Notes: a model not told the origin generated them from the letters alone. Positions 1-19,484 are shown, numbered from the stretch's first letter. The stretch: DNA of 64,000 bases from Penicillus capitatus (GCA_965649825.1 OZ287716.1:81778-145777), one strand, 5' to 3'. A program made the numbers and translations.

Positions 1-1291
1 CCTCGCCGTTCACCGAACAACAAGACGTAGTTCTCTCGATATGACACGAGAGCAGCAGATGCTTGAGTTGCATCACATTCCAAGTCCAGGACAGTTCGCT
101 CATATGCGTGACTAGGTGCAGGTTTCTTCAGGTATCGATCGATCATTGGGCGGCGCACGAAGAAAGAGCGAATTCTGATCGCGCGACTTGCGTCAGCAAC
201 CATCTCCACGGTTATACCCCTGTCAAGAGATGCTTGATTTTCGATGCTGCCTTCGAGCATTTTTGCTAAACCAATCTCCTATGCTGATCCGCTTGGCGAT
301 TGTGATGTGAGAAAATGGCATGACCTGTCAGCGCCGTACAGTGATCGTGCATGAGATAAAAGTATGGATGCTTTGGAGACATAGCAATCAACGATGCCAT
401 TGAAAACGTCGACGCCTCGTTAGAACACTGTCTACTGAGGAGTCATCCTACAGTTCCTCTTTCGGCCGAACAACGCGACAAACACAACAAAACCGCATTG
501 GCGAAGAAATGCACAGAGCATTCTTATTAAACGATGACATAGGTGTTGTTACTGTTCAATCTTTCGTCGTCCAGACGTAAAGGGATGATTTCGTCGGCGA
601 CATTTCGATTCACTGGTAGCTACATCATCGTTCGCCTTCCTCCAAAATGCATCCTATTCATCGCAGTGTTAAACTGTTTACTGTTTCGGATTTCTGTCTT
701 TCTTATCATCACTGCGATCGTCCTTCCTTGAATCTAGTGTATACTCAATCTTTATCCACTTCTTTGGCTTTTCAGACTTTTCGGAACCTTCTGCGCCGGA
801 ACTCGTCGATGCACTGCAAAACAGAAAATGGAGTCAGGCATCAAACGGTATGCATACGATCTTACGAAGTGTTTGCAGCGGCGTCCTGAGTGTCCTTGGG
901 TTCACGGAATGCCGGTGTCTGCGTTTCGGTTGGTGGAATCGGAGGGTCCATCAAGCCTGAGAACACACCATTCAAGCCAGGGAAGCAACGCGATGTTCGA
1001 CTTCGTGAGGAAATGGGATGGGCGTACTGACGAGCGCTATGCTGGAAGCTCAACGGCTTTCTGTTCGGTCCTTTGCAGGCTTGCCGAGCCCGACCCAAGA
1101 GTTCATTTATGTCCTTTTCCTGCGTTCCTTGCTGCTGGCCAGGTAACGGCCTATCTTTTAAACCACTGAGGATTTTATCGAATTCTTCTGCAGTATACTG
1201 CGGATTCTCATCGGTGGTACCGCTTCCCGATGGTTTCGGTCCTTCAACAACTGCAGTCTTCTCTTTTTCCAGTGATGGAACGGGAGATACC
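1..1291. repeat. Direct-repeat copy 1 of a segmental duplication (partner 11734-13034); runs off the window start
   Basis: Position 1 aligns to 11734. ORFs 647..889/12381..12623 and 828..1169/12562..12903 translate identically. Homology ends at GGAACGGGAGAT(A/G)CC (~1291 vs ~13034). Confidence 0.97.
678..1291 (-). pseudogene. 5'-truncated duplicate of the last exons of the coiled-coil gene at 12412-16753
   Basis: ORF 862..1296 matches the C-terminal part of ORF 12596..13312 (SPVPSLEKEKT...DAAANTS). The upstream exons are absent from this copy. Confidence 0.85.
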
Positions 1292-1294
1292 ATC

Positions 1295-2993
1295 ATGTAC
1301 AGAGATTATCTAAACTGTGTCCGGACGCCCATGGACTTTGGAACTATCAAAGGAAACATTTCCCAGTACAAGAATCCGACAGAGTTCGAAGCGGATGTGC
1401 GGTTGGTTTTTGAGAACGCAAGGAAGTACAATGCCCCAGGGACAGATGTCAGAGAGATGGCACGTGCATTGGAGGCAAAATTCGAAGAGAAGTGGACGAA
1501 ATCCGTTGTGCCCCGACTGGAGGAGTTGAAAGTCAATGAGATCGAAGATCAGATCGCTTTTAAACAAAGCAAAGCTGACAATTCAACGATGGAGGCCGAG
1601 ACAAGAGTCGACGAATGTTGTCGCCTGCTGCTGAATCGACTCCAGGTCCTGTTGTCTTTTATCCTGATGACAATGATCTTAGAGATCTGCTTGCTATATC
1701 TAGGTACTGTCTGAAGAATTAAAGTCGGTTCAGTGCCTGGCAGCAGCTCAGTGTGTCACTTTGCCCGAGGACGAACGATTGCGATTGGGATGGGAATTGA
1801 CGACGTTGGCGCCAGAGCAGTTCCAACATGCTGTGAATTTAGTTCTGATGCGACATCCAGGATTGGTGGCGACCATGCGAGATAACACAATCGAATTTGA
1901 CATCAACAAAATGGATTGTCTTACTCTAAGACAGCTGCAAGACTACATCCATGACTGCTCAAAAGAGAAGAGCAGGGCAGAGGAACGTGGTGGTCCGCTG
2001 GAAACGCCGCCCGTAAGAAAACGTCGTCGACGCTGGCCGTCGCCTTCACGTAAACACATCTGCCTTTTCACACGATCTCTATCTCACGACCTTCCGCAGG
2101 ACATGTGGACGAAGGTGTCGATCCGTACTGGCCTGTCGAAGGACAAGGCGTTCACTGGCCAAAGGTCGCACTCGGTAATGGTCTGAAGCCCTACGATGCA
2201 GAAGTGGAACCATTCATTCCACCCAGTGCAGAAGAACCTCTGTCTCTACCCTTCTCGTCTGTTTTTATGCATCATCAGCAAAACCTACAGCGTGAATCTG
2301 ATACCCCTCCTGAAAACTCTCCGGTACATATTCAAGTAGAAGACTCTGCGCTGTCTTCGCCGCCTTCGACAGCGGTCTCCACCAACCAGATGCCGATCTT
2401 TCTACCTTTGCCCCGCTCACCGAGGGATGCAGAGACAAATGCGTTTTACGGTGGAGACGCCACTGGTCCATCCGAAATCGTTTTGCCCCCTCCCTATTCT
2501 GTTCTGTCGATGTTGCCTCCGCAGAGCACAGACCTTATGTATCAACAGCAGACATTGCCTGCAACACAAGAGGCCGTTTTGCAACCGATGTCCAACACGC
2601 CTTGTCTCAGTGGTAGGTCACATCTCACTTGTGTTTGTAAGATTTTTGTCCTCTTTAGTTTCGGACATATCTCCTCCCACTGTGTTGGTCCCGACCGCTG
2701 GATTGGCGGCCATTCCGTTGGTCCCGGTATCTCAGCCGACGAGTCAGTTCCCTCCTTTCTTCACGGCAAATATTCGGCCGCCATTTGCAGCGCCGTTGAA
2801 TCCGAGTGCTCCCCTTCCTATATCACCACCTGAGTCTCCTGCCGTTGGACCTGCATCCCATCCATTCATAGCCGGTTTTCCTCCTTCCCCTATTCCGGAG
2901 CCTACAGCTACACTAGAGGCTTTCACTGCTCCAATTTCATCCACTGCGACAACAATGCCAGTCACATCAAGCGGAGATATTCGACTGGGATAA
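1295..2993 (+). CDS. Bromodomain + ET (GTE/BET-family) protein lacking the N-terminal part of the bromodomain; Pro/Ser-rich tail
   Basis: DYLNCVRTPMDFGTIK...EADVRLVFENARKYNAPG is the C-terminal half of a bromodomain. ERLRLGWELTTL...IEFDINKMDCLTLRQLQDYI is an ET domain. Three inferred GT-AG introns (near 1.65-1.70, 2.05-2.10 and 2.61-2.66 kb) keep the frame open to 2993. Confidence 0.85.
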
Positions 2994-3204
2994 GCAGCTT
3001 AAAAGTTGAACATTGTACATAAAAAGGACGTTCGATAGAGGCATAAAGCATTTTCTTTGTTGTTTTCGTTTAAAATCCAAAGTTATAATACAAACATGAG
3101 CTATCCACACGAAAAAATTCATCAAGCGTCGCACTACGGTCGGCGCTACGAATGGCAACAGGAAAAATTACACGGCCCTAAAATGCAACACCGATCGCCG
3201 ACGA

Positions 3205-3244
3205 TTCTCAGATCTCTGCCAGCGTCACGGACGTCATCTGAGAA
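3205..3244. repeat. Short inverted repeat TTCTCAGAT-N22-ATCTGAGAA just left of the satellite
   Basis: 9-bp perfect arms at 3205-3213 and 3236-3244. Confidence 0.6.
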
Positions 3245-3284
3245 ATCGGGATCTCTCCGTGAAGCCCCAGGCTTCCAATCAGAA

Positions 3285-6200
3285 CCAGAGGTCAGGTAGG
3301 ACGCCGCCGCCGCGGCCTCCAGTGGCCGAGAAGGCATCCAGTAGAGACATGAGATAGAGTAGGACGCCCATGACGGCCTTTGCGCCGCCGCCAGACGTCA
3401 GGTAGGACGCCGCCACGACAGACTCGAATGGCCAAGAAGACATCCAGTAGCAGCAGCAGATGGAGTAGGACGCCGCCACGACGGCCTCCAGTGGCCGAGA
3501 AGGCATCCAGTAGAGACATGAGATAGAGTAGGACGCCCATGACGGCCTTTCCGCCGCCGCCAGACGTCAGGTAGGACGCCGCCACGACGGCCTCCAGTGG
3601 CCGAGAAGACATCATCCAGCATCAGCGGGAGATAGAGTAGGACGCCCATGAGGGCCTCCAATGTCGGCATAAGCAGTAGCAGCAGGTGATAGAGTAGGAC
3701 GCCCACGACGGTCTTTGCACCGCCGCCAGACGTCAGGTAGGACGCCGCCACGACGGCCTCCAGTGGCCGAGAAGGCATCCAGTAGAGGCATGAGATAGAG
3801 TAGGACGCCCACGACGGCCTTTGCACCGCCGCCAGACGTCAGGTAGGACGCCGCCACGACGGCCTCCACTGGCCGACAAGGCATCCAGTAGCAGCGAGAG
3901 ATAGAGTAGGACGCCCATGAGGGTCTCCAATGTCGGCATAAGCAGTAGCAGCAGGTGATAGAGTAGGACGCCGCCACGACAGACTCGAATGGCCGAGAAG
4001 GCATCCAGTAGCAGCAGTAGATAGAGTAGGACGCCGCCACGACGGCCTCCAGTGGCCGACAAGGCATCCAGTAGCAGCAGTAGATAGAGTAGGACGCCCC
4101 ACGACGGCGTTTGCGCCGCCTCCAGACGACATGTAGGACGCCGCCACGACGGCCTCCACTAGCCGACAAGGCATCCAGTAGCAGCAGTAGATGGAGTAGG
4201 ACGCCCACGACGGCCTTTGCGCCGCCGCCAGGAGTCTGGTTGGACGCCGCCACGACGGCCTCCAGTGGCCGACAAGGCATCCAGTAGCAGCAGTAGATAG
4301 AGTAGGACGCCGCCACGACGGCCTCCACTAGCCGACAAGGCATCCAGTAGCAGCAGCAGATGGAGTAGGACGCCCATGACGGCCTTTGCGCCGCCGCCAG
4401 GAGTCTGGTTGGACGCCGCCACGACGGCCTCCAGTGGCCGACAAGGCATCCAGTAGCAGCAGTAGATAGAGTAGGACGCCGCCACGACGGCCTCCACTAG
4501 CCGACAAGGCATCCAGTAGCAGCAGCAGATGGAGTAGGACGCCGCCACGACGGCCTCCACTGGCCAAGAAGACATCCAGTAGCAGCAGTAGATAGAGTAG
4601 GACGCCGCCACGACGGCCTCCACTAGCCGACAAGGCATCCAGTAGCAGCAGCAGATGGAGTAGGACGCCCATGACGGCCTTTGCGCCGCCGCCAGGAGTC
4701 TGGTTGGACGCCGCCACGACGGCCTCCACTGGCCGACAAGGCATCCAGTAGCAGCAGTAGATAGAGTAGGACGCCCACGACGGCCTTTGCACGCCGCCAG
4801 ACGACATGTAGGACGCCGCCACGACGGCCTCCACTGGCCGACAAGGCATCCAGTAGCAGCGAGAGATAGAGTAGGACGCCCATGAGGGCCTCCAATGTCG
4901 GCATAAGCAGTAGCAGCAGGTGATAGAGTAGGACGCCCACGACGGTCTTTGCACCGCCGCCAGACGTCAGGTAGGACGCCGCCACGACGGCCTCCAGTGG
5001 CCGAGAAGGCATCCAGTAGAGGCATGAGATAGAGTAGGACGCCCACGACGGCCTTTGCACCGCCGCCAGACGTCAGGTAGGACGCCGCCACGACGGCCTC
5101 CACTGGCCGACAAGGCATCCAGTAGCAGCGAGAGATAGAGTAGGACGCCCATGAGGGTCTCCAATGTCGGCATAAGCAGTAGCAGCAGGTGATAGAGTAG
5201 GACGCCGCCACGACAGACTCGAATGGCCGAGAAGGCATCCAGTAGCAGCAGTAGATAGAGTAGGACGCCGCCACGACGGCCTCCAGTGGCCGACAAGGCA
5301 TCCAGTAGCAGCAGTAGATAGAGTAGGACGCCCCACGACGGCGTTTGCGCCGCCTCCAGACGACATGTAGGACGCCGCCACGACGGCCTCCACTAGCCGA
5401 CAAGGCATCCAGTAGCAGCAGTAGATAGAGTAGGACGCCCACGACGGCGTTTGCGCCGCCTCCAGACGTCATGTAGGACGCCGCCACGACGGCCTCCACT
5501 AGCCGACAAGGCATCCAGTAGCAGCAGTAGATGGAGCAGGACGCCCACGACGGCGTTTGCGCCGCCTCCAGGAGTCAAGTTGGACGCCGCCACGACGGCC
5601 TCCAGTGGCCGACAAGGCATCCAGTAGCAGCGGAGATAGAGTAGGACGCCGCCACGTCGGCCTCCAGTGGCCGACAAGGCATCCAGTAGCAGCAGTAGAT
5701 AGAGTAGGACGCTTATGACGGGCTTTGCGCCGCCGCCAGACGACATGTAGGACGCCGCCACGACGGCCTCCACTAGCCGACAAGGCATCCAGTAGCAGCA
5801 GTAGATAGAGTAGGACGCCCCACGACGGCGTTTGCGCCGCCTCCAGACGACATGTAGGACGCCGCCACGACGGCCTCCACTAGCCGACAAGGCATCCAGT
5901 AGCAGCAGTAGATGGAGCAGGACGCCCACGACGGCGTTTGCGCCGCCTCCAGGAGTCAAGTTGGACGCCGCCACGACGGCCTCCACTAGCCGACAAGGCA
6001 TCCAGTAGCAGCAGTAGATGGAGTAGGACGCCCACGACGGCCTTTGCGCCGCCGCCAGGAGTCTGGTTGGACGCCGCCACGACGGCCTCCACTGGCCGAC
6101 AAGGCATCCAGTAGCAGCGAGAGATAGAGTAGGACGCCCATGAGGGCCTCCAATGTCGGCATAAGCAGTAGCAGCAGGTGATAGAGTAGGACGCCCACGA

Positions 6201-7383
6201 CGGCCTTTGCGCCGCCGCCAGACGTCAGGTAGGACGCCGCCACGACAGACTCGAATGGCCGAGAAGGCATCCAGTAGCAGCAGTAGATAGAGTAGGACGC
6301 CGCCACGACGGCCTCCAGTGGCCGACAAGGCATCCAGTAGCAGCAGTAGATAGAGTAGGACGCCCCACGACGGCGTTTGCGCCGCCTCCAGACGACATGT
6401 AGGACGCCGCCACGACGGCCTCCACTAGCCGACAAGGCATCCAGTAGCAGCAGTAGATGGAGTAGGACGCCCACGACGGCCTTTGCGCCGCCGCCAGGAG
6501 TCTGGTTGGACGCCGCCACGACGGCCTCCAGTGGCCGACAAGGCATCCAGTAGCAGCAGTAGATAGAGTAGGACGCCGCCACGACGGCCTCCACTAGCCG
6601 ACAAGGCATCCAGTAGCAGCAGCAGATGGAGTAGGACGCCCATGACGGCCTTTGCGCCGCCGCCAGGAGTCTGGTTGGACGCCGCCACGACGGCCTCCAG
6701 TGGCCGACAAGGCATCCAGTAGCAGCAGTAGATAGAGTAGGACGCCGCCACGACGGCCTCCACTAGCCGACAAGGCATCCAGTAGCAGCAGCAGATGGAG
6801 TAGGACGCCGCCACGACGGCCTCCACTGGCCAAGAAGACATCCAGTAGCAGCAGTAGATGGAGTAGGACGCCGCCACGACGGCCTCCACTAGCCGACAAG
6901 GCATCCAGTAGCAGCAGTAGATGGAGTAGGACGCCCATGACGGCCTTTGCGCCGCCGCCAGGAGTCTGGTTGGACGCCGCCACGACGGCCTCCAGTGGCC
7001 GACAATGCATCCAGTAGCAGCGGTAGATAGAGTAGGACGCCCATGACGGCCTTTGCGCCGCCGCCAGGAGTCAGGTTGGACGCCGCCACGCCGGCCGCCA
7101 GTGGCCGAGAAGACATCATCCAGTATCAGCGGGAGATAGAGTAGGACGCCCACGACGGCGTTTGCGCCGCCGCCAGGAGTCAGGTTGGACGCCGCCACGC
7201 CGCCCGCCAGTGGCCGAGAAGACATCATCCAGTATCAGCGGGAGATAGAGTAGGACGCCCACGACGGCCTCCACTGGCCGACAAGGCATCCAGTAGCAGC
7301 AGTAGATCGAGTAGGACGCCCACGACGGCCTCCACTGGCCGACAAGGCATCCAGTAGCAGCGGGAGAAAGAGTGAGTACGCCC
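3285..7383. repeat. Modular minisatellite array 1: about 73 copies of core GGACGCC(GC)CACGACGGCC in ~43-66 bp units, with higher-order duplications
   Basis: Manual count of cores. A 63-bp unit (...TCCASTRGCCGACAAGGCATCCAGTAGCAGCAGTAGATRGAGTA) is interleaved with ~43-bp units (...TTTGCGCCGCCGCCAGGAGTCTGGTT and variants) and a TCCAATGTCGGCATAAGC variant. Repeated ORF-track translations and end-points recur at offsets of 1234 and 2266 bp. Confidence 0.97.
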
Positions 7384-7674
7384 GCGGCTGCATCCCGTGA
7401 CTGCCAAAGCGGTAAGTAGAGCTTCCATGACGTAATTCGGCCTCCAATCACGGCGTGACCCCATACAGACCATCCATGGCTGCCATCGGGCCTCCAGCAG
7501 CTGCAAGACATCAGGTGGATCATCTGTCAATGCCTCCAATGACAGTAATACAGCAAAGAGAACATCCATGATGTCTTCCAATGACAGCCAAACAGTACAT
7601 AAATCATCCATCAGAGACGGCCTCCAGCCTCAGCAGCGACAGGAACACATCAGGAAGGTAATCCAGGTCGGCTT

Positions 7675-8283
7675 TTAGCCTCCAATGACAGCAAAGAGCG
7701 AACAGATGATTGAGCACGGCCGCCAGGCCTCCAGTGACAGCAAAGAGCGAACAGATGATTGAGCAGGGCCGCCAGGCCTCCAGTGACAGCAAAGAGCGAA
7801 CAGATGATTGAGCAGGGCCGCCAGGCCTCCAGCGACAGCAAAGAGATAAGTATGATGAATCACGGCCGCCAAGCCTCCAATGACAGCAAAGAGCGAACAG
7901 ATAATTGAGCACGGCTGCCAGGCCTCCAATGACAGCAAAGAGCGAACAGATGATTGAGCACGGCCGCCAGGCCTCCAGTGACAGCAAAGAGATAAGTATG
8001 ATCCATCACGGCCGCCAGGCCTCCAGTGACAGCAAAGAGATAAGTATGATCCATCACGGCCGCCAGGCCTCCAATGACATCAGGGTAAGGAACAGATGAT
8101 CCATCACGGCCGCCAGGCCTCCAGCGACAGCAGGATAGGGAACAGATGATCCAGCACGGCCGCCAGGCCTCCAATGACATCAGGGTAAGGAACAGATGAT
8201 CCAGCACGGCCGCCAGGCCTCCAATGACATCAGGGTAAGGAACAGATGATCCAGCACGGCCGCCAGGCCTCCAATGACAGTCA
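7675..8283. repeat. Minisatellite array 2, 48-50 bp units
   Basis: Units such as GACAGCAAAGAGCGAACAGATGATTGAGCACGGCCGCCAGGCCTCCAAT. They share GGCCTCCA(A/G)T with array 1, and degenerate copies bridge 7384-7675. Confidence 0.95.
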
Positions 8284-8520
8284 ATAATCAGGTAGGATAT
8301 CCAGCACGGTTTCCATCCACCAATCACAACGAGACATCGGATAAGACACGCCAGCCTCCGGGCGGCAAAACAGCAAGTATAGCACAGCAGCCTTCATGTC
8401 AGACACAGCAAATGAGATTCCTACAGCCTTCAGGTAAAAAACAGTTACAGAGCCATCCACAACAAAGCGGAGGTGGAATGGCAGAGAAACGGGTCGGAAG
8501 AAATAAAACAGCCCCTTTTG

Positions 8521-8605
8521 CATCTTTTTATTTTTTTTATTTTTTTGGTTGATTATTTAGTCACACTTCAGAGTGTGACTTTTTTTATTTTTATTATTTA
8601 TTTTT
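8521..8605. other. Perfect palindrome AGTCACACT-TCAG-AGTGTGACT (8559-8580) flanked by (T)nA tracts
   Basis: 9-bp arms with a 4-nt loop. T-rich runs lie on both sides and read as AATAAA/A-rich on the minus strand. Confidence 0.85.
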
Positions 8606-8767
8606 TCTCAGACAAAAAATTGTGAGATGCTTGAGAAGAAAATAGAAATTTTTGTTTTTTTTTTTCAAATTTTTTGTACACCCCCACGAAGACATCTTAA
8701 AAATCTAAACAGACCTGGCACCCCACACAGGCCAATTCTCGATGGAAACCTACAAGACAAACAAATT

Positions 8768-9902
8768 TTAGGAAAGACAAAGACGAAATTTTCTTACGCA
8801 TTGCCCCGACATGAAGAAGAGGCGTTCGGGGATGGCAGGCGAGCAGATTGGAAGGCACTCGCCAGACATAAAAAAAGGACGGGAAGGGAATCCGGACGGT
8901 CTGACAGGAAAAATAGAAGGTCGGGGAGGGATGGGAGGTGGCTGATTAAGGGAGAAGAGGGATGTCCGAATGGGAAAGGGAGGAGGAAGAGCAGGGAGGG
9001 AGAAAAGTAAAGGACGAGAGGGGATTATGGGCGAAGGAGATGCAGGAATAGAAAATACTTGAGGCCGCGGTGGAAACAAAGGAGGTTGGATTTGCGGCAC
9101 AGAGGGTGGGGAAAGGATGGGCTGAGGAATCGATGATGGGGACCACCCCATCTGTGGCGGCTGTGCAGGTTGGGAGGCAGGCTGCGCAGCAGAATGGTGG
9201 TCTGGCGACTGGGCAGACGGCGCGGCTGGAGGCGCAGGAGCAGGGGACCACTCCATGTGTGGCGGGGCTCCAGGCTGGCAGGTTGGCGGCGGAGGGGCTG
9301 GCTGGCAGGTTGGCGGCGGAGGGGCTCCAGGCTGGGTAGGCTCAGAGACGGGCGGAGGCGGCGCATATGACTGGACACGCTGCGGAGGCGGCTGAGCAGC
9401 AGGCTGGCCCTCTTGGGCCAACCGCGCTTGCCTCTCCGCGGCCGAGAGGACCCTGGCCCTCCGCCCGGGCCGAGGCTGTGCGCTTTGGTCCCTATTGGGA
9501 CCAAAGCGCACAGGAGGGGTCTGAGCAGCTACGTGCTCCTGACCCCTCAGTGCGGTTGATTGGGCCTTGAGGTCCCAATACAACCGCACCCTCGCGGCCT
9601 CGTCCATGCCCTGGAAGGCCCTGGGCGGTTGATTGCCCAGGACCTCCCGTAAGGTCACCTGTGCGAAGCTACAGAACACACAGAGGTTAGTGAACCCTAG
9701 AAGAACAGGGCGGCCGCGCGTTCACTGTAGCGCGCAACCGCCATCGTCTAGACTGCAGCTGGACGCTTGCATGTTCGCAGCAATCGTCCAGGCTGCAGTT
9801 GAAGAGCTCCGTAGCGCGCGACTCGTCGAAGCATGGCAACAGCACTCACGGTTTGCCCGGATAGCCGTAATCAGCCTCCGTAAACATGTGTGCGTCGGCC
9901 AT
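8768..9902 (-). CDS. Orphan two-exon Pro/Gln-rich protein (~317 aa)
   Basis: Exon 1 (9902-9850) reads MADAHMFTEADYGYPGKP, with donor GTGAGT at 9849. The acceptor CTAAC...TTCTGTAG at 9669 joins it in frame to ORF 8768..9679. No family recognised. Confidence 0.65.
9476..9513. repeat. Perfect 17-bp-arm hairpin CTGTGCGCTTTGGTCCC-TATT-GGGACCAAAGCGCACAG
   Basis: Arms 9476-9492 and 9497-9513 are exact reverse complements. Confidence 0.95.
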
Positions 9903-10573
9903 CGTCGTGAAAGTCGGTTGTCAAAGAGAGCAGCAAAGATCGCCGGAAGCAGCAGAGAACCCGAAACTCGAGTGCGGAAGGCTTGGCGACAGGACCTTTA
10001 TAGGCCGCCTCGGTTGCTGAGCGCGACCTGCGGACGGCGGCTGGGAACCGTGGCCGTTTGCCGGCGCCTGCATGCGCCGCCGGACAAAGAATCGGCCGCC
10101 AGACGGCCAGAAACGCAGAGTACTGTCGTCGGGATGCGCGTCGCGAAAGAGAGAGCGTTTCCAGTAGCTTAGCGAAGTGTTTTACAGGAGACATTTCTTA
10201 GAGTTTGTCCGTGTGCACCGCTCTGAGTGTAACGCGCATGCGTTCTCTGCGGATGTTCCGACGCGGATCTCCGAACGGCCAACCGCTCGAGTCAGCTCCG
10301 CGTTGCCTGAGCAGAGGAACGCGGCGGGCGTTCTCTCTTGCAGAAGCGGCAAGGACTCTACGTCTGGACGGCCGTCTGTTTCGGGCGCCTCCGTCGCAAA
10401 CGCCGTCGAGAGAGCGATCTGCGCGGTGTAACGCGAATTGGTTTGAGAAGTTGGCGTGGGCCCTAACTCCCTCGAACATGGAAGGCCGAACCGAACGACG
10501 CCTTCTGCGAGAACCAGACGGCCACGGAGCCGTCGTCTGAGTTCATGCTCGCGCACAGCGTCGAGGGAGCGTT

Positions 10574-11580
10574 TTGGAGGACGCCGTTCGCTGCGATCGA
10601 CGCAGTCGGTCGCTTTCTATGACAGCTGTGCATGACTGCTGCTTTGTCTGCCAAGCCAGCCATTGGGACTGTCTCGAGGATCACGTGTGCGACGGCACTG
10701 TCGATCGAGGTCGGGGCCAGTTGCGATCCGATGCCACCGCCTACCTTCTCTCCGGCGTATTCCACTGTGCAGAGCGCACCAAAGAGGCAGATTGGCATTG
10801 GGACGGGCAGGTATGCTGCTGCATTCTCAGTGGAGTCGTCCATGCCGTTTCGTTCTAGTGTCCTGCGAGTTCTGATGTTATGAGGGCTGCGAAGGAGATC
10901 GTCCGTCATCCGTTCGGAGACCGCTTAGCGAAAACTTCTGCAATGAAAGACGAATAACTACCGCCGAGTGTTCTGCGCGCGTGGGGGTTCGGGGACGATG
11001 TCGTCAGTGCTGTCCACGTGCTCTTGGACGGTAAGTGCACTGTGGAATGCATGAACTAACGTCATGCCTGCTCTTGGCTCTGCCGTTTGGACTGTGATTC
11101 GGCATTCCTCGCAGAACACCGAGATGCCTGTCGACGTCAGCGCGTTGGATCGAGACCAAGGAATGCATTCGCATAACAAAGCGTCCTCAAAACAACGGTG
11201 CGAGAGAACGTACAATAAGTGATGCGCACTGCAGACGGCAAAACGATTTCAGAAAGAGAGAGTGTTTGTTGGGGTCTAAAAGAATGCGACTGTCCACTCC
11301 TCGATGTTTCGGCTGGCAAATCGAGAAGAGACAGAAGGGGATGAATCCAATCGTGGATTCAGTTCCTACCTTTCCACTGCATCTACGCGAGCATCCTGCA
11401 CAGAGAACTGATGGATGTGGATTTGATGCGCGAACGCGTATCGCGTATCGCGATTCTGCTTTGCCACCACAGTGCGTCCTTCTAGACAGTGGCAGTTGCT
11501 CTCTCGTCGGTTGCATCGTCTTCTTCGTTAACTTCAGTGATCTGTCAATACAGCCATCCGGGACTGTGCTGTACGCTTGA
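10574..11580 (+). pseudogene. Possible degenerate spliced gene relic (Cys/His-rich exon, in-frame TAA)
   Basis: CAG|GTATGC...TTCTAG joins ORF 10574 in frame to CPASSDVMRAAKEIVRH...MKDE*LPPSVLRAWGFG. A further GTAAGT donor and a CTCGCAG acceptor follow. No recognisable family. Confidence 0.25.
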
Positions 11581-11733
11581 GCATTATATGCTTTGCATAT
11601 GTGCTTTTCAGTTTAATTTGAGCTGTGCTTGGGTTCTTTCATCTATGCTTATTGCTTATTGCTCAGAAGCAGCATCTCAGAGCAAACATCTAAATCTATC
11701 GTTGTACAACAGACGGTCGGCGAGGAAAGATGA

Positions 11734-13034
11734 CCTCGCCGTTCACCAAACAACAAGACGTAGTTCTCTCGATATGACACGACAGCAACGGATGCCTGAG
11801 TTGCATCACATTCCAAGTCCAGGACAGTTCGCTCATATGCGTGACTAGGTGCAGGTTTCTTCAGGTATTGATCGATCATTGGGCGGCGCACGAAGAAAGA
11901 GCGAATTCTGAACCGCGACTTGCGTCAGCAACCATCGCCACAGTTATACCCTTGTCAAGAGATGCTTGATTTTCGATGCTGCCTTCGAGCATTTTTGCTA
12001 AACCAATCTCCTATGCTGATCCGCTTGGCGATTGTGATGTGAGAAAATGGCATGACCTGTCAGCGCCGTACAGTGATCGTGCTGGTGAGATAAAAGTATG
12101 GATGCTTTGGAGACATAGCAATCAACGATGCCATTGAAAACGTCGACGCCTCGTCAGAACACTGTCTACTGAGGAGTCATCCTACAGTTCCTCTTTCGGC
12201 TGAACAACGCGACAAACACAACAAAACCGTATCGGCGAAGAAATGCACAGAGCATTCTTATTAAACGATGACAGAGGTGCTGTTACTGTTCAATCTTTCA
12301 TCGTCCAGACGTAAAGGGATGATTTCGTCGGCGACATTTCGATTCACTGGTAGCTACATCATCGTTCGCCTTCCTCCAAAATGCATCCTATTCATCGCAG
12401 TGTTAAACTGTTTACTGTTTCGGATTTCTGTCTTTCTTATCATCACTGCGATCGTCCTTCCTTGAATCTAGTGTATACTCAATCTTTATCCACTTCTTTG
12501 GCTTTTCAGACTTTTCGGAACCTTCTGCGCCGGAACTCGTCGATGCACTGCAAAACAGAAAATGGAGTCAGGCATCAAACGGTATGCATACGATCTTACG
12601 AAGTGTTTGCAGCGGCGTCCTGAGTGTCCTTGGGTTCACGGAATGCCGGTGTCTGCGTTTCGGTTGGTGGAATCGGAGGGTCCATCAAGCCTGAGAACAC
12701 ACCATTCAAGCCAGGGAAGCAACGCGATGTTCGACTTCGTGAGGAAATGGGATGGGCGTACTGACGAGCGCTATGCTGGAAGCTCAACGGCTTTCTGTTC
12801 GGTCCTTTGCAGGCTTGCCGAGCCCGACCCAAGAGTTCATTTATGTCCTTTTCCTGCGTTCCTTGCTGCTGGCCAGGTAACGGCCTATCTTTTAAACCAC
12901 TGAGGATTTTATCGAATTCTTCTGTAGTATACTGCGGATTCTCATCGGCGGTACCGCTTCCCGATGGTTTCGGTCCTTCAGCGACTGCAGTCTTCTCAGT
13001 CTTCTCTTTTTCTAGCGAAGGAACGGGAGATGCC
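11734..13034. repeat. Direct-repeat copy 2 (native locus, overlapping the coiled-coil gene 3' end)
   Basis: See copy 1. This copy continues seamlessly into the intact gene and has a 9-bp expansion (EKTEKT). Confidence 0.97.
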
Positions 13035-16000
13035 TTTCCGGTATCTTTGACTGTCAACGACTGGATATGCATCTGCTGTGGCGCCTGGCTCTGAGCAGGC
13101 AGGTGCACAGTTGTCGTCGAAGCCGGTGGATCTTGCAACTGTTGTTGCTGCACCAGATGCGGAGAGTTCTCCTCTTGTCTTATCAGTACCTCTATTCTTT
13201 CCTTCAGAGTCTTGTTCTCTTCGATTTTCCTCTGCAGTTTCTGCCTCCACGTCTTAATCTCTCCAATGTAGTCATCCACTTCTGCTATCTTGGTTGCAAT
13301 TTGTGTTCGCAATTCCTGGTTCTCACTCTCTGCCTTCTCTAGTTTTGCCTAGAACGAGATCATCAAAGGAGAAGACGATCCCGTTTTGCGGGTACCTCTA
13401 GATCCTGAACCATTTCTCGCTGTTTGAGATCCAGTCCTTCCATCTGTTTCTGCATAGACTTTCCCTGCGCTTCGCTTTCTTGACATTGACCCTTCCACTT
13501 CAAGACTTCCAAGTTGACAGCATCACGTTCCGTTTCCAATGTGGCGATGGTTGCATGCATTTCCGCGATAACATTCACGTGTTCTTCCTTTGCAGATTGC
13601 ATCTGTTTCTCACACTCCTCTTTTTTCTCGGACAGTGATTTCTCAGCTGCCTTGAGTTGCATCTCCTGTTCTCGAACCTGCCTTTCTGCTTGCTGCAGTT
13701 TCAACTGCAGCTCATCGAATGCCTCTTTTTCTAACACTCTGCCACAGGTATGAAGACGTTCTGTCAATTCCGTTATGACGTCATCTTTGGTTTGGAGTTG
13801 CATCTCAAGATGACGCATGGTATTCACCAACTCCTCCACATCCGATCCTTTCTCCTGTTCGGCCTGTTGTCCAACAAACACATGCATTCTTGTAGGGAAT
13901 GGATGATAGACATACAGGGGTTTCCACTCTTTTGGATCCCTCAGCCAGTTGGGCACTGTACTGTGCTTTGAGTTGATCGATTTCGTCCACGTGGCACTGT
14001 TCCATCTGCATCATACGGTTCTGCAGGTCAGTGAACAGTTTCTTCTCTTTTTTCAGCTTCTCGACATCCAATTGGTGTGTCGCTTCCTGCTTGTTCATCT
14101 TTTCTTTTGCAACCTCGGCTTCTCTTGACATGGCAGCGATCACAGTTTCCAATTCCTTGATTCTCACTCTTGCTCCTTGCATTTGTGATTTAAACTGATC
14201 CTTCAGAGTCTTGTGCAACTCCAATAGGCTGTTGTACTTAGATTGATACTCCACGAGATTGTGATCCAAGTCTTTCAGATCTTTTTGATAGAGCTCCTGC
14301 AAAGACAGAGAGGGCGTCAGTGAGGGCGCCATCTGAAAAAGAAGTACATTCTGTGTCTGGGTACGTTCCAACTGTTGCTTCAGTTCAGTCTTGATCTGTG
14401 CCTGGACAGCTTTTGCAGCAGAGAATTCTGCCTGAGCATTTTCCCATTTCTTCTTCCAGACAGAGTCACCATCACCAGAGTACACGACCTGGAATCGCAC
14501 ATTCTGCATCGACAACATTTCGAGCATGACGAAAGATGCCAGACTTGTCGGGATTTTGCCCCAGATGATGATTCTTGCATCTTTTGCTTCTTTTTGGAGG
14601 GGCCTGGTTGATCCGCCGAAATGCGCTTTTGTGTCTCTCCATCGTTTTGCTCGTCATAGGCTGGAGTCATCTCTTCTTCCTGATGTTTCTTTTGCTGCGA
14701 CGCTTCCAATTTTTCTTTAAGCTCTTTCACTTTCAGCTCCATCCGATTCTTCTGTCTCGTCAACTGCCTGCATTAAATGGCATCCAGTCTCAGCTTCGTC
14801 ATCACACTGCTGTAGATACATACATGTTTAATTCCACGATATCGTGAGCGCAAGTAGGCTGAGGTTGGTCGCTCTCTGGATTAGGTTGCAGAAGTCGTGC
14901 ACCTTCAGCCCCTTTTAAGACCCTTTCAGTTGATTCGATTCTTTTCAGCAGGAACTTGGTCTGCAAATCACCGCCAACACTTTATATTCCGAAACAGAAT
15001 AGAGTGCGGAGTCTACTTGAGCAGCAGCAGAGGCATTGGCCTTTTGCAAAGCCCGCATCTCAAGGCAGAAATTCTCTCTTTCTTCCTTGCACTTTTCTAT
15101 AGTATCCATCTGCTGATCTACTTGTCCTTGCAGTTCGTCAATCTCTCTGGCACGTCTCTTGCAAATCTGCATGGCCAACAAGAATCTCAACGACCACATA
15201 TGGACCGAGCCAATAGATACTTTGGCCAGTTCAGACAGCTCAAACTTCAGAACACGTCTCTCTGTCAACGTTTGTTTGTGAGCGTTCGAGAGTTTCTCTT
15301 TGTTGGCATTTTCCATCATTCTTGCTCGAATTTGATCGTTGTACTTCGCCGCCTACACATCCCAATTCTTCAGCAGAGAACAAACTGCGTCATCTTTACC
15401 ATCTCCACACACTTTCTTTTCAGATCCTGGAACGTCATGTTCTGTGGAAACTGCAGGTTCATCATAGGCGGAAGCACGCTGTCTTCACCCAACGGACTCT
15501 CGTGTTCTGGCAGTCCAATGTGAGCGAGATTCATCGGAGTGAATAGATGTAGCGAATCATCGTCGATCGCAGCGGGTTCTGCCTCAGACTCTGACTCTGT
15601 GGTCTCAACAACATCGTCTTTGTGTGCAACTCCACGCGCTCCTTGATGTTCAGCTTCTGGCTGTGGCTCAAGTGAAGGCCCAGCTTGATTCTGCTGCTGC
15701 TGCTGCTCTTGAGGCTCTCCTTCCACTTGAGGTTCGTGCTGAATTTCAAATGTGTCTGGCAGTCGATTCCCGAGTCGCCGCCGACGGATTCTCGTTTCTT
15801 TACGTTCGGTTCGTCCTTTGGAGGGTTCCTGAGCAGAACTCTTGCTGTTTCTCTCCCTCTTGCGCTCAGACTTGTATGCAGCGATGCATTCTCCGAAAGC
15901 TTTAGAAGTGTCTTGCAGGACGCCTTGTGTGATCTTATACTCTTCTTGTTTCTTATCCAATGCCACCTTGAGTCTATCGATCTGTTGATCTTTGCGATTC

Positions 16001-16753
16001 AATTGGTTTGTGAGGTTTGTTTCCTGAACACCACGTCACATCATGTCACACTTTTATCTCTATTGCTCTCCAAATGCTCACCGTATGTGACCATTGTTCG
16101 AACTTGTGCTCAAATTGTCGTCTCAGATCCTCAACTTCGGTACGGGCATTCTGATATCTCTCTTTCCAAATGGCTGTATGTTTTCGGCTCTCTTCCAGTT
16201 CGGCCAGCGTTTCTTTGAGCTCATTGGATTTGACTTCGACACGACCTTTCAGCATATCAATGTCCTTTTGGAAAGTCAGTCGGTCTTCGGCTGGAATCTC
16301 CCTCTGAGTGAGAGCCTCAGTGAGACGTTCCGACAATTCTTTGATTTGCATAGACACTTCCGTATTCATCGTCGCTGCGCCCCACGCAGGTCCACCATTC
16401 TCATCGCGGGCTTTCGCAAGTTCCACTTCTAACTGTCGGCGCTCCGACCGAACGGACTCAAGTTCCGCCTTCAGCCGCGCATTTTCTTGCTGCGTTTCTT
16501 CTACGAGCTGAGCACACGCACGTAGACACACACGCACTTATCTATCTTCTCCGTTGTTCTTCAGTGTCGCGCACTTTTTTGTTGTTTTCGACGTGAACCG
16601 TCGCTTCTTGGTATTGCTCCTCCATCGTCTTGAGCTCCTCCTCCATCGCCTGCCACATTTCGGTTCAAACTCAGAACGACAAATCGACGGTGCGGTGCGT
16701 ATCACTTGGTAATGCTCTTGCAGCACCGCATCGATCGCGGTGTCCTTGTCCAT
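12412..16753 (-). CDS. Large multi-exon coiled-coil protein, uncharacterised
   Basis: E/K/Q-rich heptad ORFs 16046..16537, 15370..16002, 14945..15319, 14380..14763, 13805..14527, 13363..13956 and 12596..13312. Start MDKDTAIDAVLQEHYQ at 16753. A GTAAGA...TTGCAG intron extends the frame to a TAA at 12412. Confidence 0.8.
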
Positions 16754-16911
16754 GGCGGATATCAGCAAACAAACGCAACTCGCGAATCGAGTACGTGCGT
16801 TCGTGCGTTCGTGCGCGTGCGTTCGTTCAAATGAAACCAACGTTTGGACACGGTCGCTTCAACGATTGCGAATTTAGCGCGGAATTCATTGTTACTGGTT
16901 CAGCAAATCCC

Positions 16912-17685
16912 ATGTCTATCCTTACCTGCGTCTGTTTTCTGACTCTGTTTACGTTTACACACGCTGTCGTCGGAGAATGCGACGCGTCAGAGCTCGGCTA
17001 TGAATGCATGAAGAGCCTCGCCGAGTACTACAACGTTCACTGGACACTTCGCGGTTCGGTGCTTCACATGGCTCTGGAAGGAATCGGAGCCGAATGGGTC
17101 GGCTTCTCCTTTCCTCAGATTCCTGAAAAGATGTTTCCAGCGGACGCGGTCATCGGATGGCTCGACGTTAACGGACCGTCCGTGTTGCCTTATCACCTGA
17201 CCACACAGTCCGTGTTTAGCGAAGACGAAGACTTTGCCATTATTCTAAGCAATGTCAGTGCTATCCAAGACACGGAGAGAACAATTGTCGCCTTTACGCG
17301 ATCGACAACACAAGGCCGCGTTAAAATCAAGGTCGACGAGGACATGCCAATCAATTTTGCCATCGGAGACGTTGACTCCTTGCGATACCATAGAGAGAGG
17401 GGCAGTTCCACGATTCTTCTTTCGGCTGAACCAGGAGAGGGACGCACGGCAGCTTTTCGACCACCTCCTCTCAGTGCCAATATCAGCCCCAGTCCCGACG
17501 AAGTCGAAACGAGTAGCGAACCGTCGCTGCCAACGAGAACCATTATTCTACCATCAGATGTCGAAGATTTAACGACTGCTGTCTTTTCAGCCCCAGGCTC
17601 CGAGTCCTCCATTGAGGCTCCAGAGTCCAATGGGGGTGAAGACGAAGACGACGAGGTCCGTCTACTGCTTGACGGTCTCAAGTGA
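16912..17685 (+). CDS. Secreted single DOMON-domain protein with a Ser/Pro/Glu-rich tail, intronless
   Basis: Signal-peptide-like MSILTCVCFLTLFTFTHAVVG. WVGFSF...KMFPADAVIGW and a distal YH are typical DOMON motifs. Confidence 0.8.
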   Translation: MSILTCVCFLTLFTFTHAVVGECDASELGYECMKSLAEYYNVHWTLRGSVLHMALEGIGAEWVGFSFPQIPEKMFPADAVIGWLDVNGPSVLPYHLTTQSVFSEDEDFAIILSNVSAIQDTERTIVAFTRSTTQGRVKIKVDEDMPINFAIGDVDSLRYHRERGSSTILLSAEPGEGRTAAFRPPPLSANISPSPDEVETSSEPSLPTRTIILPSDVEDLTTAVFSAPGSESSIEAPESNGGEDEDDEVRLLLDGLK

Positions 17686-17962
17686 TCAGCTCTGAACTGC
17701 AATGACAATCGTAACAATATCAAACTCCTGACCTCATTCCTCGATGGATATGCAATATCTCATTTACTATCTCTGTCTTCAGTATTTTTGTCGCGTTTCA
17801 AATGATCGAAGCAAAAGTTCTGCGGGGGGGGGCAGCACTATTCGTTGTCACAAGTTAAAGCACGACTGACGGTATCAGCCGGATACAAACTATCATTTGT
17901 CATCATCATCATCGATGAGTGAGTGAGCACAGCGGTGGATATGACTGACATGCGATTCTCTT

Positions 17963-18577
17963 TTAATAGTCCTCTACTCCCAGAATGTCCAAAGCTACAT
18001 AGGGATCTCTGCTTCTCCACAGCACTGGATAAGTTTTCCTTTCTGGACAGTGTCGAAGGAAGTCATCTGGGATTCCTGGATTTGCATAGACGTTTAAGCT
18101 ACTCTCACGATTTGTGCGACGTTCTCTTCGAATTTGTAAACCACAACGCTGACACTCTGTTCCCATCCAGATCAATCCACCACGTTTGCCGTCAAAGTCC
18201 GTTCGGAGACGGGGAAAATCTTCGAGGTCCATGCGACGGGGGTCGAATCCAACGAAGCGATGGGGAGTGCGATAATCGGGAAGCTCTTTTGGCGGCGGTG
18301 GCGGCTTCTCTTCGTCGACAACGTCCGACGAGATAGCGTCCTCGACTGGATCGTCGACCGCTTCGAGTTCTGCCTCGAGTTGAGCGAAATCCTCTAGCGT
18401 CTCGGGCGAAAGCAAATCATTGTCGGAGTCGGATGCCGTCTCGATCTTTGAGAAGTGTTTTCGTCGATCGGCCGATTCGGCTTTGGGACGCGTCGTGTAC
18501 CGTCGGCATCGCGTTCGCAGCAGGGGAGAACGGAGGGGAGAGGTGAAGGATAAGGAGATGCGCGAGCAGGTCTGCAT
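17963..18577 (-). CDS. Hypothetical protein with a transit-peptide-like N-terminus; 3' exon structure unresolved
   Basis: MQTCSRISLSFTSPLRSPLLRTRCRR is followed by an acidic segment and ELPDYRTPHRFVGFDPRR. Confidence 0.45.
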   Translation of the reverse strand: MQTCSRISLSFTSPLRSPLLRTRCRRYTTRPKAESADRRKHFSKIETASDSDNDLLSPETLEDFAQLEAELEAVDDPVEDAISSDVVDEEKPPPPPKELPDYRTPHRFVGFDPRRMDLEDFPRLRTDFDGKRGGLIWMGTECQRCGLQIRRERRTNRESSLNVYANPGIPDDFLRHCPERKTYPVLWRSRDPYVALDILGVEDY

Positions 18578-18940
18578 CGATCGCGTTGTCACAATGATTG
18601 TTCGATCCGTCGGCCTTTGTCGCGCCCTTTTCAGTCGTCCGCTCGCGACGACACGGCACGTCCGTTGCTTGACATCGCGCGAACCGGAGTACGGTTCATC
18701 TGAGAAACTTATTTCCGTTTCGGACGTCGTGAAAGAAGTGCGCAATGGAAAGAGGGAGAGAATACAAATCGGATGGGTCTAGGCCGCGGAACTGGGCGAG
18801 AATTTTGTCTTTACGGATAACAGCGACGAACCGGTTTTCAAATACGAAGAGGCGCTAAGAGGAGATCCTGAAAAGAGTACCCAATACACAACGACCCTCG
18901 CAAATCTCGTGCTCGTGTGGATGCAATAGAAGACAAAAGT

Positions 18941-19450: not shown

Positions 19451-19484
19451 TCCAAGGAATGACAGATCGTCCATTCTACAGACC

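What the first reader, a model, noticed from the sequence alone, without database searches (positions are those of the whole stretch)
1292..11733. 10.4-kb composite island bracketed by a >=1.3-kb direct repeat: candidate gene-capturing mobile element
Seen: between two near-identical copies of a host gene 3' end lie a headless bromodomain-ET gene, two related satellites, three hairpins, A/T tracts and a compositionally distinct orphan gene. Downstream DNA is wall-to-wall housekeeping genes. Known: Helitron/Helentron-type rolling-circle elements capture gene fragments, carry internal tandem arrays and end in hairpins, and homologous integration of a circle leaves an X-R-insert-R-Y arrangement. 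Inference: this is a non-autonomous cargo element or an integrated eccDNA. No transposase, Rep-helicase, recombinase or RT is visible.
Basis: partly seen in the sequence, partly recalled or inferred. Interest (0 to 1): 0.8.

Follow-up and report, generated by a model that had tools for sequence, protein, structure and literature searches.

The report
Segmental duplication junction in green alga
The "island" is not a gene-capturing transposon but one end of a polymorphic cluster of large duplicated DNA segments in a green alga, where a piece running from the middle of one gene to the middle of its neighbour was joined head-to-tail to itself; this is an ordinary kind of genome rearrangement.

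Summary
The delimitation is not sound: the 11733/11734 edge only mirrors the window start, because the left repeat copy (1-1288) runs off the window.

The 1288|1289 boundary is a real junction (J). It joins a coiled-coil gene exon to the bromodomain exon of a BET-like gene through 4 bp of microhomology (AGAT). J is identical in three other contigs of a same-species metagenome assembly.

A sister species has the BET gene and the coiled-coil gene convergent, 1.4 kb apart, with no satellites and no duplication. The bromodomain fragment is therefore in its ancestral place, not captured.

The interior (3285-11416) is an ~8-kb multi-copy unit, E. It holds two related satellites, an A/T tract, a Pro-rich gene with no known domain (22 homologue clusters) and non-coding GC-rich DNA.

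Units lie inverted about 70 kb apart, and all four flank combinations occur. That suggests an inversion polymorphism, or an assembly path switch inside the satellite.

No transposase, Rep-helicase or Helitron termini were found. Whether J arose by tandem duplication or by a reintegrated circle is unresolved. Interest is low to moderate.

The parts
1..1288 (-). R1: extra, truncated copy of the 3' end of the coiled-coil gene (last ~95 codons, 1003-1288) plus its downstream DNA. It is cut by the window edge on the left.
   Evidence: 98.06% identical to 11734-13031. Matches the sister-species coiled-coil gene 3' end, L001 12377-13467. tblastn of the sister-species ORF hits 1003-1290.
1285..1288 (.). 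Junction J: 4-bp microhomology AGAT, where coiled-coil exon sequence (...GGAACGGGAGAT) switches to BET bromodomain exon sequence (ACCATCATGTAC...).
   Evidence: Alignment with native coiled-coil and native BET sequences. The breakpoint is identical in contigs L007, L008 and L012.
1289..2993 (+). 5'-truncated BET-like gene (BDP3'). It holds the C-terminal two thirds of the bromodomain (about 1298-1465), an intron, the ET domain (about 1764-1952), a putative intron near 2016-2098, and a Pro/Ser-rich tail ending at the stop at 2991-2993.
   Evidence: Pfam Bromodomain from HMM position 26 of 84, and BET. 86.6% identical to sister-species L001 9433-10997. 98% identical to the intact same-species gene in L006. 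The intron near 2016-2098 is read from the sequence.
3285..7383 (+). Satellite 1: 63-, 106- and 169-bp units with kilobase-scale internal duplications. The strand is strongly A>T skewed. Periods are not multiples of 3, so it is non-coding.
7384..8460 (+). Satellite 2 (49-50-bp units, well formed at 7678-8280) with degenerate copies on both sides. It shares the core GGCCTCCANTGAC with satellite 1.
8515..8700 (.). A/T-rich tract with short hairpins (8560-8579 perfect 8-bp stem; 8606-8627 imperfect). It is probably the 3' end region of the orphan gene.
   Evidence: Sequence read. The assignment as a 3' end is inference.
8768..9679 (-). Pro-rich gene with no known domain. A conserved ~95-aa basic helical N-terminal region (9404-9676) is followed by a variable proline-rich middle and a conserved C-terminal part.
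   Evidence: The ORF is kept at 317-347 aa in the alpha and three beta copies despite about 25% nucleotide divergence and many indels. Third-position excess of substitutions: 18/15/50. 22 homologue clusters in 1.84e9 representatives. No Pfam or PDB match.
9476..9513 (.). Perfect 17-bp-stem palindrome with a 4-nt loop, lying in the codons for VRFGPNRDQSAQ of the orphan gene.
   Evidence: 95.8% of cells are paired across 7 copies, with 2 compensatory pairs.
9680..11416 (.). GC-rich non-coding block; the right end of the multi-copy unit E. Homology with the copies next to COG4 stops sharply after ...CTGATGGAT at 11416.
   Evidence: No codon periodicity and frame-breaking indels among 7 copies. 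Boundary alignment. Three sequence types, alpha, beta and gamma.
11417..11733 (.). Spacer 'h', specific to the BET/coiled-coil locus. It lies between unit E and the part of the repeat that the window shows twice.
   Evidence: 100% identical to L006 and absent from the COG4-side copies. 11570-11733 is present to the left of R-J in L007, L008 and L012.
11734..13031 (-). R2: the native 3' end of the coiled-coil gene, continuous with the rest of the gene.
13032..16650 (-). Remainder of the intact coiled-coil gene (several exons). It is syntenic with the sister species and followed by DOMON, rhodanese, SpoU and helicase genes.

Best explanation
The region is the product of segmental duplication in a green alga, not a transposable element.

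Origin of the junction. One ~11.7-kb segment S was once joined head-to-tail to itself by end-joining at 4 bp of microhomology. S runs from the middle of the bromodomain exon of a BET-like gene, across the spacer, to the middle of the last coding exon of the convergent coiled-coil gene. The joint is J, window 1285-1288|1289. J leaves a coiled-coil 3' fragment (R1) fused to a headless BET fragment. The next, intact coiled-coil gene supplies the second repeat copy (R2).

Nature of the interior. The spacer inside S is unit E (3285-11416). It consists of two related fast-evolving satellites, an A/T tract, a real lineage-specific Pro-rich gene and about 1.7 kb of non-coding GC-rich DNA. E is multi-copy in this species and absent from the sister species' spacer.

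Rearrangement between copies. In the same-species assembly, S/E copies lie in inverted orientation about 70 kb apart. Recombination between them would flip the intervening segment. The window is the isomer 'J + alpha unit + coiled-coil gene'; its reciprocal partner is 'intact BET + beta unit + COG4'.

Shown: the junction, its recurrence in four contigs, the synteny, the multi-copy nature of E, and the four flank combinations.
Inferred: that J arose once by tandem duplication or circularisation; that the isomers are real inversions rather than assembly path switches; and that the truncated fragments have no function.
For: (1) The repeat period is 11,733 bp and the left copy runs to window base 1.

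(2) J joins the distal end of S to the proximal start of S in the same orientation, mid-exon to mid-exon. The microhomology is AGAT inside a 9/12 imperfect match.

(3) The same J is present in L007 (572-kb contig, 41x), L008 (14x) and L012 (6x). These differ from the window and from each other by 2-3%. J is therefore not a chimeric read.

(4) Left of R-J, those contigs continue with spacer h, a GC block, sat2 and a satellite. That is more of a unit, as expected for head-to-tail units.

(5) The sister species (L001 and L004, two haplotigs) has PRMT - CDKN3 - BET -> <- coiled-coil - DOMON - rhodanese - SpoU - helicase. Its spacer is 1.38 kb, with no tandem repeats, no core motif and no duplication.

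(6) The same-species contig L006 has the intact BET gene followed by a unit collinear with window 1278-11819.

(7) On that same contig L007 lies 69.6 kb away in the opposite orientation. All four flank combinations exist: L006 head+cc, L007 J+COG4, L009 head+COG4, window J+cc.

(8) No mobile-element domain was found in any ORF of 1-13 kb.
Against: The window cannot be extended upstream, because its own contig is not retrievable. The left copy is seen for only 1.29 kb.

The window is 100% identical to L006 from 5224 to 11819 but 2-3% different to the left of 5223, inside satellite 1. A real crossover predicts this, but so does an assembler switching paths in the satellite. L009 also switches within satellite 1.

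Immediately right of J the window carries L006-like rather than L007/L008-like variants. That does not fit a simple crossover far from J.

The GC block linked to R-J (gamma) is the most divergent copy, about 85%, while R copies differ by only 2-2.6%. Either rates are very uneven or the history is reticulate, with gene conversion.

E has a sharp right boundary and occurs in at least two unrelated contexts. Some form of mobility of E is therefore not excluded.
Confidence: 0.7

Rival explanations
1. Circle (eccDNA) route. Segment S was excised as an 11.7-kb circle closed at J by microhomology. It then reintegrated by homologous recombination into a paralogous copy of unit E next to COG4, giving E-h-R-J-BDP3'-E. 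Inversion between the inverted copies later brought J next to the native coiled-coil gene, as seen in the window.
For: L010 (7x contig, same sample) has flankL-E-COG4 with no R, J or BET piece. L007 has flankL-E(gamma)-h-R-J-BDP3'-E(beta)-COG4. That equals L010 plus one circularly permuted S unit embedded in E.

The left satellite in L007 is of the L010 type and the right one is of the window type, as a single crossover inside E predicts.

Duplication through a circle that is reinserted elsewhere has been proposed for human loci (PMC7188851).

This route needs fewer steps from the observed 'empty' state than tandem duplication plus inversions; this is my inference.
Against: Under this model the gamma GC block should derive from the alpha copy and be its closest relative. 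It is the most distant, about 85% against about 90% for beta and epsilon.

The copies are mosaics when compared by thirds, so present similarity does not record the original event.

No circle has been observed. The same structure arises from a tandem duplication at the native locus followed by recombination between inverted E copies.
Confidence: 0.3
2. Assembly artefact at the level of the window. J and the duplicated units are real, but the window's particular adjacency is not. In this view R1-J-headless BET continuous with the alpha unit and the intact coiled-coil gene was created by a metagenome assembler switching between paralogous or strain paths inside satellite 1.
For: The abrupt change from 2-3% divergence to 0 differences against L006 at window 5223/5224, inside the satellite.

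The sample holds several haplotypes or strains at 6-41x, with many alternative small contigs for this region.

L009 also switches partner within satellite 1.
Against: The reciprocal adjacency (intact BET + beta-type unit + COG4) exists as an independent 22-kb contig. Its GC block is about 10% different from every other copy, so it is not a splice of two sequences held here.

A real crossover in the satellite predicts exactly the same pattern.

The satellite is only about 4 kb. I infer that long reads of the kind the contig names suggest would normally span it.
Confidence: 0.25
3. Non-autonomous mobile element (Helitron-like or of an unknown class). Either the island 1292-11733 or its core E transposes and has captured gene fragments.
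For: E (3285-11416) is absent from the sister species' spacer.

E occurs between BET and coiled-coil, upstream of COG4 and again downstream of COG4.

E ends sharply at 11416.

E carries internal tandem arrays, hairpins and a member of a fast-diverging gene family with 22 clusters.
Against: No Rep/helicase, transposase, RT or recombinase domain.

The BET and coiled-coil pieces are explained by J and synteny, not by capture.

E's right end (...CTGATGGAT) shows no CTRR with a subterminal hairpin, and its left end is a satellite with no definable terminus.

The copy downstream of COG4 is part of a ~14-kb tandem repeat that includes flanking unique DNA. That points to segmental duplication.

Only two independent contexts are known, both within about 80 kb.
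Confidence: 0.07

Closest known systems
Tandem / segmental duplication with a microhomology junction (NHEJ, MMEJ or replication template switching, FoSTeS/MMBIR); named from my own knowledge
   Same: A single head-to-tail joint between the distal end and the proximal start of one segment, in the same orientation, with 4 bp of microhomology. One boundary gene stays intact per side and a chimeric joint of two gene fragments lies in the middle. The sister species lacks the joint.
   Different: The full left unit cannot be seen in the window. The J-bearing copies in the related assembly sit at a second locus in inverted orientation. The units are mosaics at 85-98% identity, so more than one event is involved.
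Inversion polymorphism by non-allelic homologous recombination between inverted segmental duplications (as at human 17q21.31 or 8p23; my own knowledge)
   Same: Inverted repeats of about 10 kb flank a 69.6-kb segment on one contig. All four flank combinations are found, and the partner switches fall inside the repeat.
   Different: The evidence is from metagenome contigs only. There is no read-level or genetic confirmation, and the organism is uncultured or unnamed.
eccDNA-mediated duplication: excision as a circle and reinsertion elsewhere (Takahashi & Innan 2020, PMC7188851)
   Same: A copy at a second locus that is a circular permutation of the source segment, with the circle-closing joint (J) inside it.
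   Different: Here the insert is embedded in a pre-existing paralogous repeat, which implies homologous rather than end-joining reintegration. The block spans more than one unit, and the divergence pattern does not single out the circle route.
Helitron / Helentron gene-fragment capture
   Same: Gene fragments lie next to tandem arrays and hairpins, and no transposase is visible in the copy.
   Different: No Rep/Hel anywhere, no 5'-TC/3'-CTRR termini and no subterminal 3' hairpin at an end. The gene fragments are in their ancestral positions. The boundaries are an exon-exon joint and a window artefact.

Membership tests
Helitron/Helentron (rolling-circle element) | Rep endonuclease + PIF1-like helicase protein, in autonomous copies | tested here: not met
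   No such Pfam domain in any ORF >=80 aa of window 1-13 kb. The AAA_11/AAA_12 helicase at 20642-23488 is a syntenic host gene. A non-autonomous copy would not need this protein.
Helitron/Helentron (rolling-circle element) | Defined termini (5'-TC ... CTRR-3') with a hairpin 10-20 nt before the 3' end, and insertion between host A and T | tested here: not met
   The left edge of the island is the coiled-coil|BET exon joint. The right edge is a window artefact. E's only sharp end reads ...CTGATGGAT. The hairpins are internal, at 8560-8627 and 9458-9513.
Helitron/Helentron (rolling-circle element) | Many dispersed copies with shared ends at unrelated sites, and empty sites | tested here: inconclusive
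   E is seen in 2-3 contexts, all within about 80 kb of one contig. No genome-wide census was possible. The sister species' spacer is too diverged to serve as an empty site.
Tandem segmental duplication | One novel junction joining the end of the unit to the start of the unit in direct orientation | tested here: met
   J at 1288|1289, between coiled-coil (window-equivalent 13031) and BET mid-bromodomain. Both pieces keep their native orientation.
Tandem segmental duplication | The two copies are adjacent and homologous over the whole unit | tested here: inconclusive
   Only 1,288 bp of the left copy are visible in the window. In L007, L008 and L012 the sequence left of R-J continues with h, GC block, sat2 and satellite. 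It does not reach a BET 3' part within the DNA held.
Tandem segmental duplication | Absent from an outgroup that keeps the single-copy arrangement | tested here: met
   Sister-species haplotigs L001 and L004. Same-species L006 has a single unit with an intact BET gene.
eccDNA excision and reintegration | A circularly permuted copy containing the circle joint, at a locus that exists in an 'empty' state | tested here: inconclusive
   L007 against L010 fits the topology. The gamma copy is the most divergent, and a tandem-duplication route is equally possible.
eccDNA excision and reintegration | Physical circular molecules carrying the joint | not testable with these tools
   Needs reads, Circle-seq or outward PCR.
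NAHR inversion polymorphism | Inverted repeats flanking the segment, with both orientations present in the population | tested here: inconclusive
   The inverted units on one contig are 69.6 kb apart, and the four flank combinations are seen. An assembly path switch is not excluded.
BET / GTE bromodomain proteins (the gene fragment) | Bromodomain followed by an ET domain | tested here: met
   Pfam PF00439 and PF17035. The first 25 profile positions of the bromodomain and the whole N-terminal part of the protein are missing in the window copy. They are present in L006, L009 and the sister species.

The most novel reading that the evidence does not exclude
Unit E (satellite arrays + a conserved helical/Pro-rich gene family with an internal conserved palindrome + a GC-rich block) is a previously undescribed duplicative or mobile DNA element of green algae that spreads without an enzyme of its own. 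Alternatively, J is the scar of an eccDNA that reintegrated by homology in a natural algal population. That would give a wild example of circle-mediated gene duplication that also seeds an inversion polymorphism.
Probability: 0.15. Interest if true: 0.6.

Novelty: new member of a known kind. Interest (0 to 1): 0.27.

Why it matters
As it stands, this documents an ordinary process in an unnamed green alga known only from metagenome contigs. The process is segmental duplication with a microhomology joint, satellite-rich spacers and probably repeat-mediated inversion.

The finding is useful as a caution. A repeat that runs off a window edge, next to truncated genes, satellites and hairpins, mimics a cargo transposon.

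Two side results could be followed up. One is a lineage-specific protein family (22 clusters, no known domain) that travels with the duplicated unit. The other is a locus where the 'empty', 'filled' and apparently inverted states co-occur in one sample. That could allow a direct read-level test of circle-mediated against tandem duplication.

Tried and rejected
Extending the window. Exact look-ups of window ORFs 862-1296(-) and 1848-2186(+) found nothing. The window's own contig is not retrievable, so I worked through a 97-98% identical assembly found by exact matches of other window ORFs.

Homologue search of 11 concatenated ORFs of 8768-11848. It returned no hits, and I first read this as 'orphan, no homologues'. 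That was a false negative, probably caused by low-complexity words saturating the candidate list. The exhaustive HMMER search found 22 clusters.

Apicomplexan origin. I guessed this from composition and rejected it: the proteasome subunit is closest to green algae and plants.

Satellites as coding repeats. Rejected: the periods (49, 106, 169) are not multiples of 3, and the long minus-strand ORFs follow from the strand's base skew.

GC block 9700-11416 as coding. Rejected: no codon periodicity and frame-breaking indels.

CpG-driven decay as the cause of the fast GC-block divergence. Rejected: CpG observed/expected is 1.2 and transitions roughly equal transversions.

Sister-species COG4 locus as an empty site. 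The 90% clusters held no sister-species member.

Simple crossover model for the window. Variants next to J do not sort cleanly by paralogue.

Rfam and tRNA scans of the window found nothing.

Fold search of the orphan protein model was not run, because the model is mostly disordered (pTM 0.27).

Full report
What is in the sequence

The window is eukaryotic. A proteasome alpha subunit at 44444-45097 is closest to green-algal and plant proteins: Bryopsis 67%, Coccomyxa 65-67%, and spinach is the best PDB hit. The source is therefore a green alga without a close named relative.

The direct repeat is real. Window 1-1263 matches 11734-12997 at 98.0%. Across a 9-bp indel it extends to 1288 vs 13031. 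The left copy begins at window base 1. The finding's right edge (11733) is therefore window start plus the 11,733-bp period, not a boundary of anything.

All the listed contents are present:
- A bromodomain match that starts at profile position 26 of 84, followed by an ET domain.
- Satellite 1 at 3285-7383 (63/106/169 bp) and satellite 2 at 7678-8280 (49-50 bp).
- A shared core, GGCCTCCANTRRC, with 46 hits, all on the + strand within 3314-8278, against 0.04 expected.
- An A/T tract with short hairpins at 8515-8700.
- A perfect 17-bp-stem palindrome at 9476-9513.
- A 303-aa ORF at 8768-9679 (-) in 58-66% GC DNA.

The left boundary is an end-joining scar

I aligned the junction with the native coiled-coil sequence (window 13020 region) and with native BET genes of relatives. 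Coiled-coil exon sequence runs up to ...GGAACGGGAGAT (1288). BET bromodomain exon sequence follows from ACCATCATGTAC (1289). The native partners read GGGAGAT|GCC and GGTAGAT|ACC. The crossover therefore lies in a shared AGAT, inside a 9/12 imperfect match. The bromodomain is cut within PFNEPVD|TIMYRDY, in an exon and not at an intron.

This junction (J) joins the far end of a segment to its near start in the same orientation. That is the signature of a head-to-tail joint of one unit S, running from mid-BET to mid-coiled-coil, 11,733 bp in the window.

Synteny shows nothing was captured

A sister species (ENA ERZ26696514) has two haplotigs, L001 and L004, 83-87% identical to the window. Its gene order is PRP39-like, PRMT, CDKN3-like phosphatase, intact BET gene ->, <- coiled-coil gene, DOMON, rhodanese, SpoU, helicase.

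The BET and coiled-coil genes are convergent and 1.38 kb apart. That spacer has no tandem repeats, no core motif and no similarity to window 2847-12017. The window's BET fragment is thus at its ancestral position relative to the intact coiled-coil gene. The extra pieces are R1 and J on its left, and about 8 kb inside the spacer.

Same-species contigs

The window's own contig could not be retrieved. Exact matches of other window ORFs led to assembly ERZ25074695, which is 97-100% identical to the window. It contributes these loci:

| Locus | Contig | Content |
|---|---|---|
| L006 | 572 kb, 41x | Upstream genes, intact BET gene, then a unit collinear with window 1278-11819. L005 continues collinear further right. 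|
| L007 | same contig, 69.6 kb away, opposite orientation | flankL, a 42/83/125-bp satellite, sat2, GC block 'gamma', spacer h, R, J, headless BET, sat1, sat2, GC block 'beta', then COG4 |
| L008 | 14x | The same J at the identical breakpoint, with gamma-type sequence to the left of R |
| L012 | 6x | The same J at the identical breakpoint, with gamma-type sequence to the left of R |
| L009 | 16x | PRMT, intact BET, satellite, beta-type GC block, COG4 |
| L010 | 7x | flankL, satellite, sat2, GC block, COG4, with no R, J or BET piece. It also contains a ~14-kb direct repeat that includes COG4. |

J is therefore real and of single origin. It is carried by four sequences that differ by 2-3%.

All four combinations of left flank (BET head or R-J) and right flank (coiled-coil or COG4) exist. 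This is what recombination between the two inverted ~10-kb units would produce by flipping the 69.6-kb segment between them. The window is the J + alpha-unit + coiled-coil isomer, and L009 is its reciprocal partner.

Caveat on the window's adjacency

The window differs from L006 by 2-3% from 1278 to 5223. It then shows zero differences from 5224 to 11819, and the switch point lies inside satellite 1. L009 likewise changes partner within satellite 1.

A real crossover and an assembler path switch predict the same picture. Directly right of J the window carries L006-like variants, which fits neither model neatly. I rate an artefactual adjacency in the window at about one in four. J and the duplicated units themselves are not in doubt.

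The interior unit E

Homology between the BET/coiled-coil copy and the COG4-side copies runs from the start of the satellites to a sharp end at window 11416 (...CTGATGGAT). GC-block copies fall into three types: alpha (window = L006), beta/epsilon (about 90%) and gamma (about 85%). Relationships are mosaic when compared by thirds, so the history is reticulate. The block 9700-11416 is non-coding, with no codon periodicity and frame-breaking indels.

The ORF at 8768-9679 (-) is a real gene. It stays open at 317-347 aa in the alpha copy and three beta copies, despite about 25% nucleotide divergence and many indels. Its N- and C-terminal parts are conserved and its proline-rich middle is variable. 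The gamma copy is frameshifted near the C-terminus. Substitutions pile up at third positions, 18/15/50 in the C-terminal part.

An exhaustive HMMER search found 22 homologue clusters, 17 of them at E <= 1e-10. They share a basic N-terminal region of about 95 aa. My earlier 'no homologues' result was a false negative. There is no Pfam or PDB match. The AlphaFold model shows three helices and a disordered tail (pLDDT 62).

Mobile-element tests

No ORF in 1-13 kb has a Rep, helicase, transposase, RT or recombinase domain. The island's 'ends' are an exon-exon joint and a window artefact. E's one definable end lacks Helitron features, and its other end is a satellite. E's third copy is co-duplicated with unique flanking DNA in a ~14-kb tandem repeat, which points to segmental duplication.

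E is absent from the sister species' spacer and sits in at least two unrelated contexts. A duplicative element of unknown type cannot be excluded, and I give it about 7%.

How J arose

Two routes fit.

(a) Tandem duplication of S at the native locus, followed by recombination between inverted E copies.

(b) Excision of S as a circle closed at J, followed by homologous reintegration into the paralogous E next to COG4. This turns L010's arrangement into L007's in one step and resembles the eccDNA-mediated duplications proposed for human loci (PMC7188851).

Route (b) predicts that the gamma block is alpha-derived, yet gamma is the most divergent copy. Uneven rates and gene conversion blur this: allelic GC blocks differ by 5-9% where R and BET differ by 1-2%. 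I leave the route open, with (b) at about 0.3.

Verdict

The cargo-transposon reading is not supported. Interest is low to moderate.

Noticed in passing
window 9476-9513 (and the same site in L007, L008, L009, L010): A perfect 38-nt palindrome lies exactly on the most conserved codons (VRFGPNRDQSAQ) of the orphan gene. In the gamma and epsilon copies two stem pairs changed on both sides (C:G to G:C, U:A to A:U). The first-arm changes are synonymous and the second-arm changes are non-synonymous. This suggests either selection on a DNA/RNA hairpin or templated quasi-palindrome mutation.
   Followed up: partly
window 5223/5224, compared with L006: The window is 2-3% diverged from the 572-kb same-species contig on the left and in the 34-55 kb region (L005). 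It is 100% identical from 5224 to at least 11819, and protein-identical at 13805-14527 and 20314-20592. This is a haplotype mosaic or a consensus switch.
   Followed up: partly
L010 1-6140 vs 13973-20003: A ~14-kb direct repeat containing flanking unique DNA, unit E and COG4 (97.4% in the unique 2.2 kb). The 572-kb contig appears to end inside the equivalent satellite. The cluster probably continues as further tandem units.
   Followed up: partly
window 8768-9679 (-); proteins P0156-P0177: The 'orphan' belongs to a family of at least 22 clusters at the 50% identity level. They share a basic ~95-aa N-terminal region (invariant R30, L33, G60, P61, R73, R76, R83) with no Pfam or PDB relative. Many members diverge right after ...RLAQ(E)GQ, which suggests an exon boundary there.
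   Followed up: partly
window 45324-46061 (-): An ORF with a LOV-type PAS domain carrying the GRNCRFLQG flavin-cysteine motif (PAS_9 in the related contig's annotation). It is probably a blue-light receptor gene, consistent with a photosynthetic host.
   Followed up: no
window 61309-62505 (+): An ORF that reads like an HslU/ClpY-type AAA+ ATPase (Walker A GPTGCGKT) with an N-terminal extension, possibly organelle-targeted. It was not checked against any library.
   Followed up: no
window 1253 vs 12986-12994: A 9-bp tandem unit CAGTCTTCT is single in R1 and in the sister species but doubled in R2, L007, L008 and L012. It is a slippage-prone site that does not follow the copy genealogy.
   Followed up: partly
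L001 and L004 (ERZ26696514); contigs of 6-16x in ERZ25074695: Both metagenome assemblies hold two or more near-identical versions of this locus on separate contigs. The algal populations sampled are therefore diploid or multi-strain, which limits what contig structure alone can prove.
   Followed up: no
method (vs 83): The word-seeded homologue search returned nothing for a proline-rich query, although close paralogues exist in the same collection. Low-complexity queries can saturate its candidate list.
   Followed up: yes
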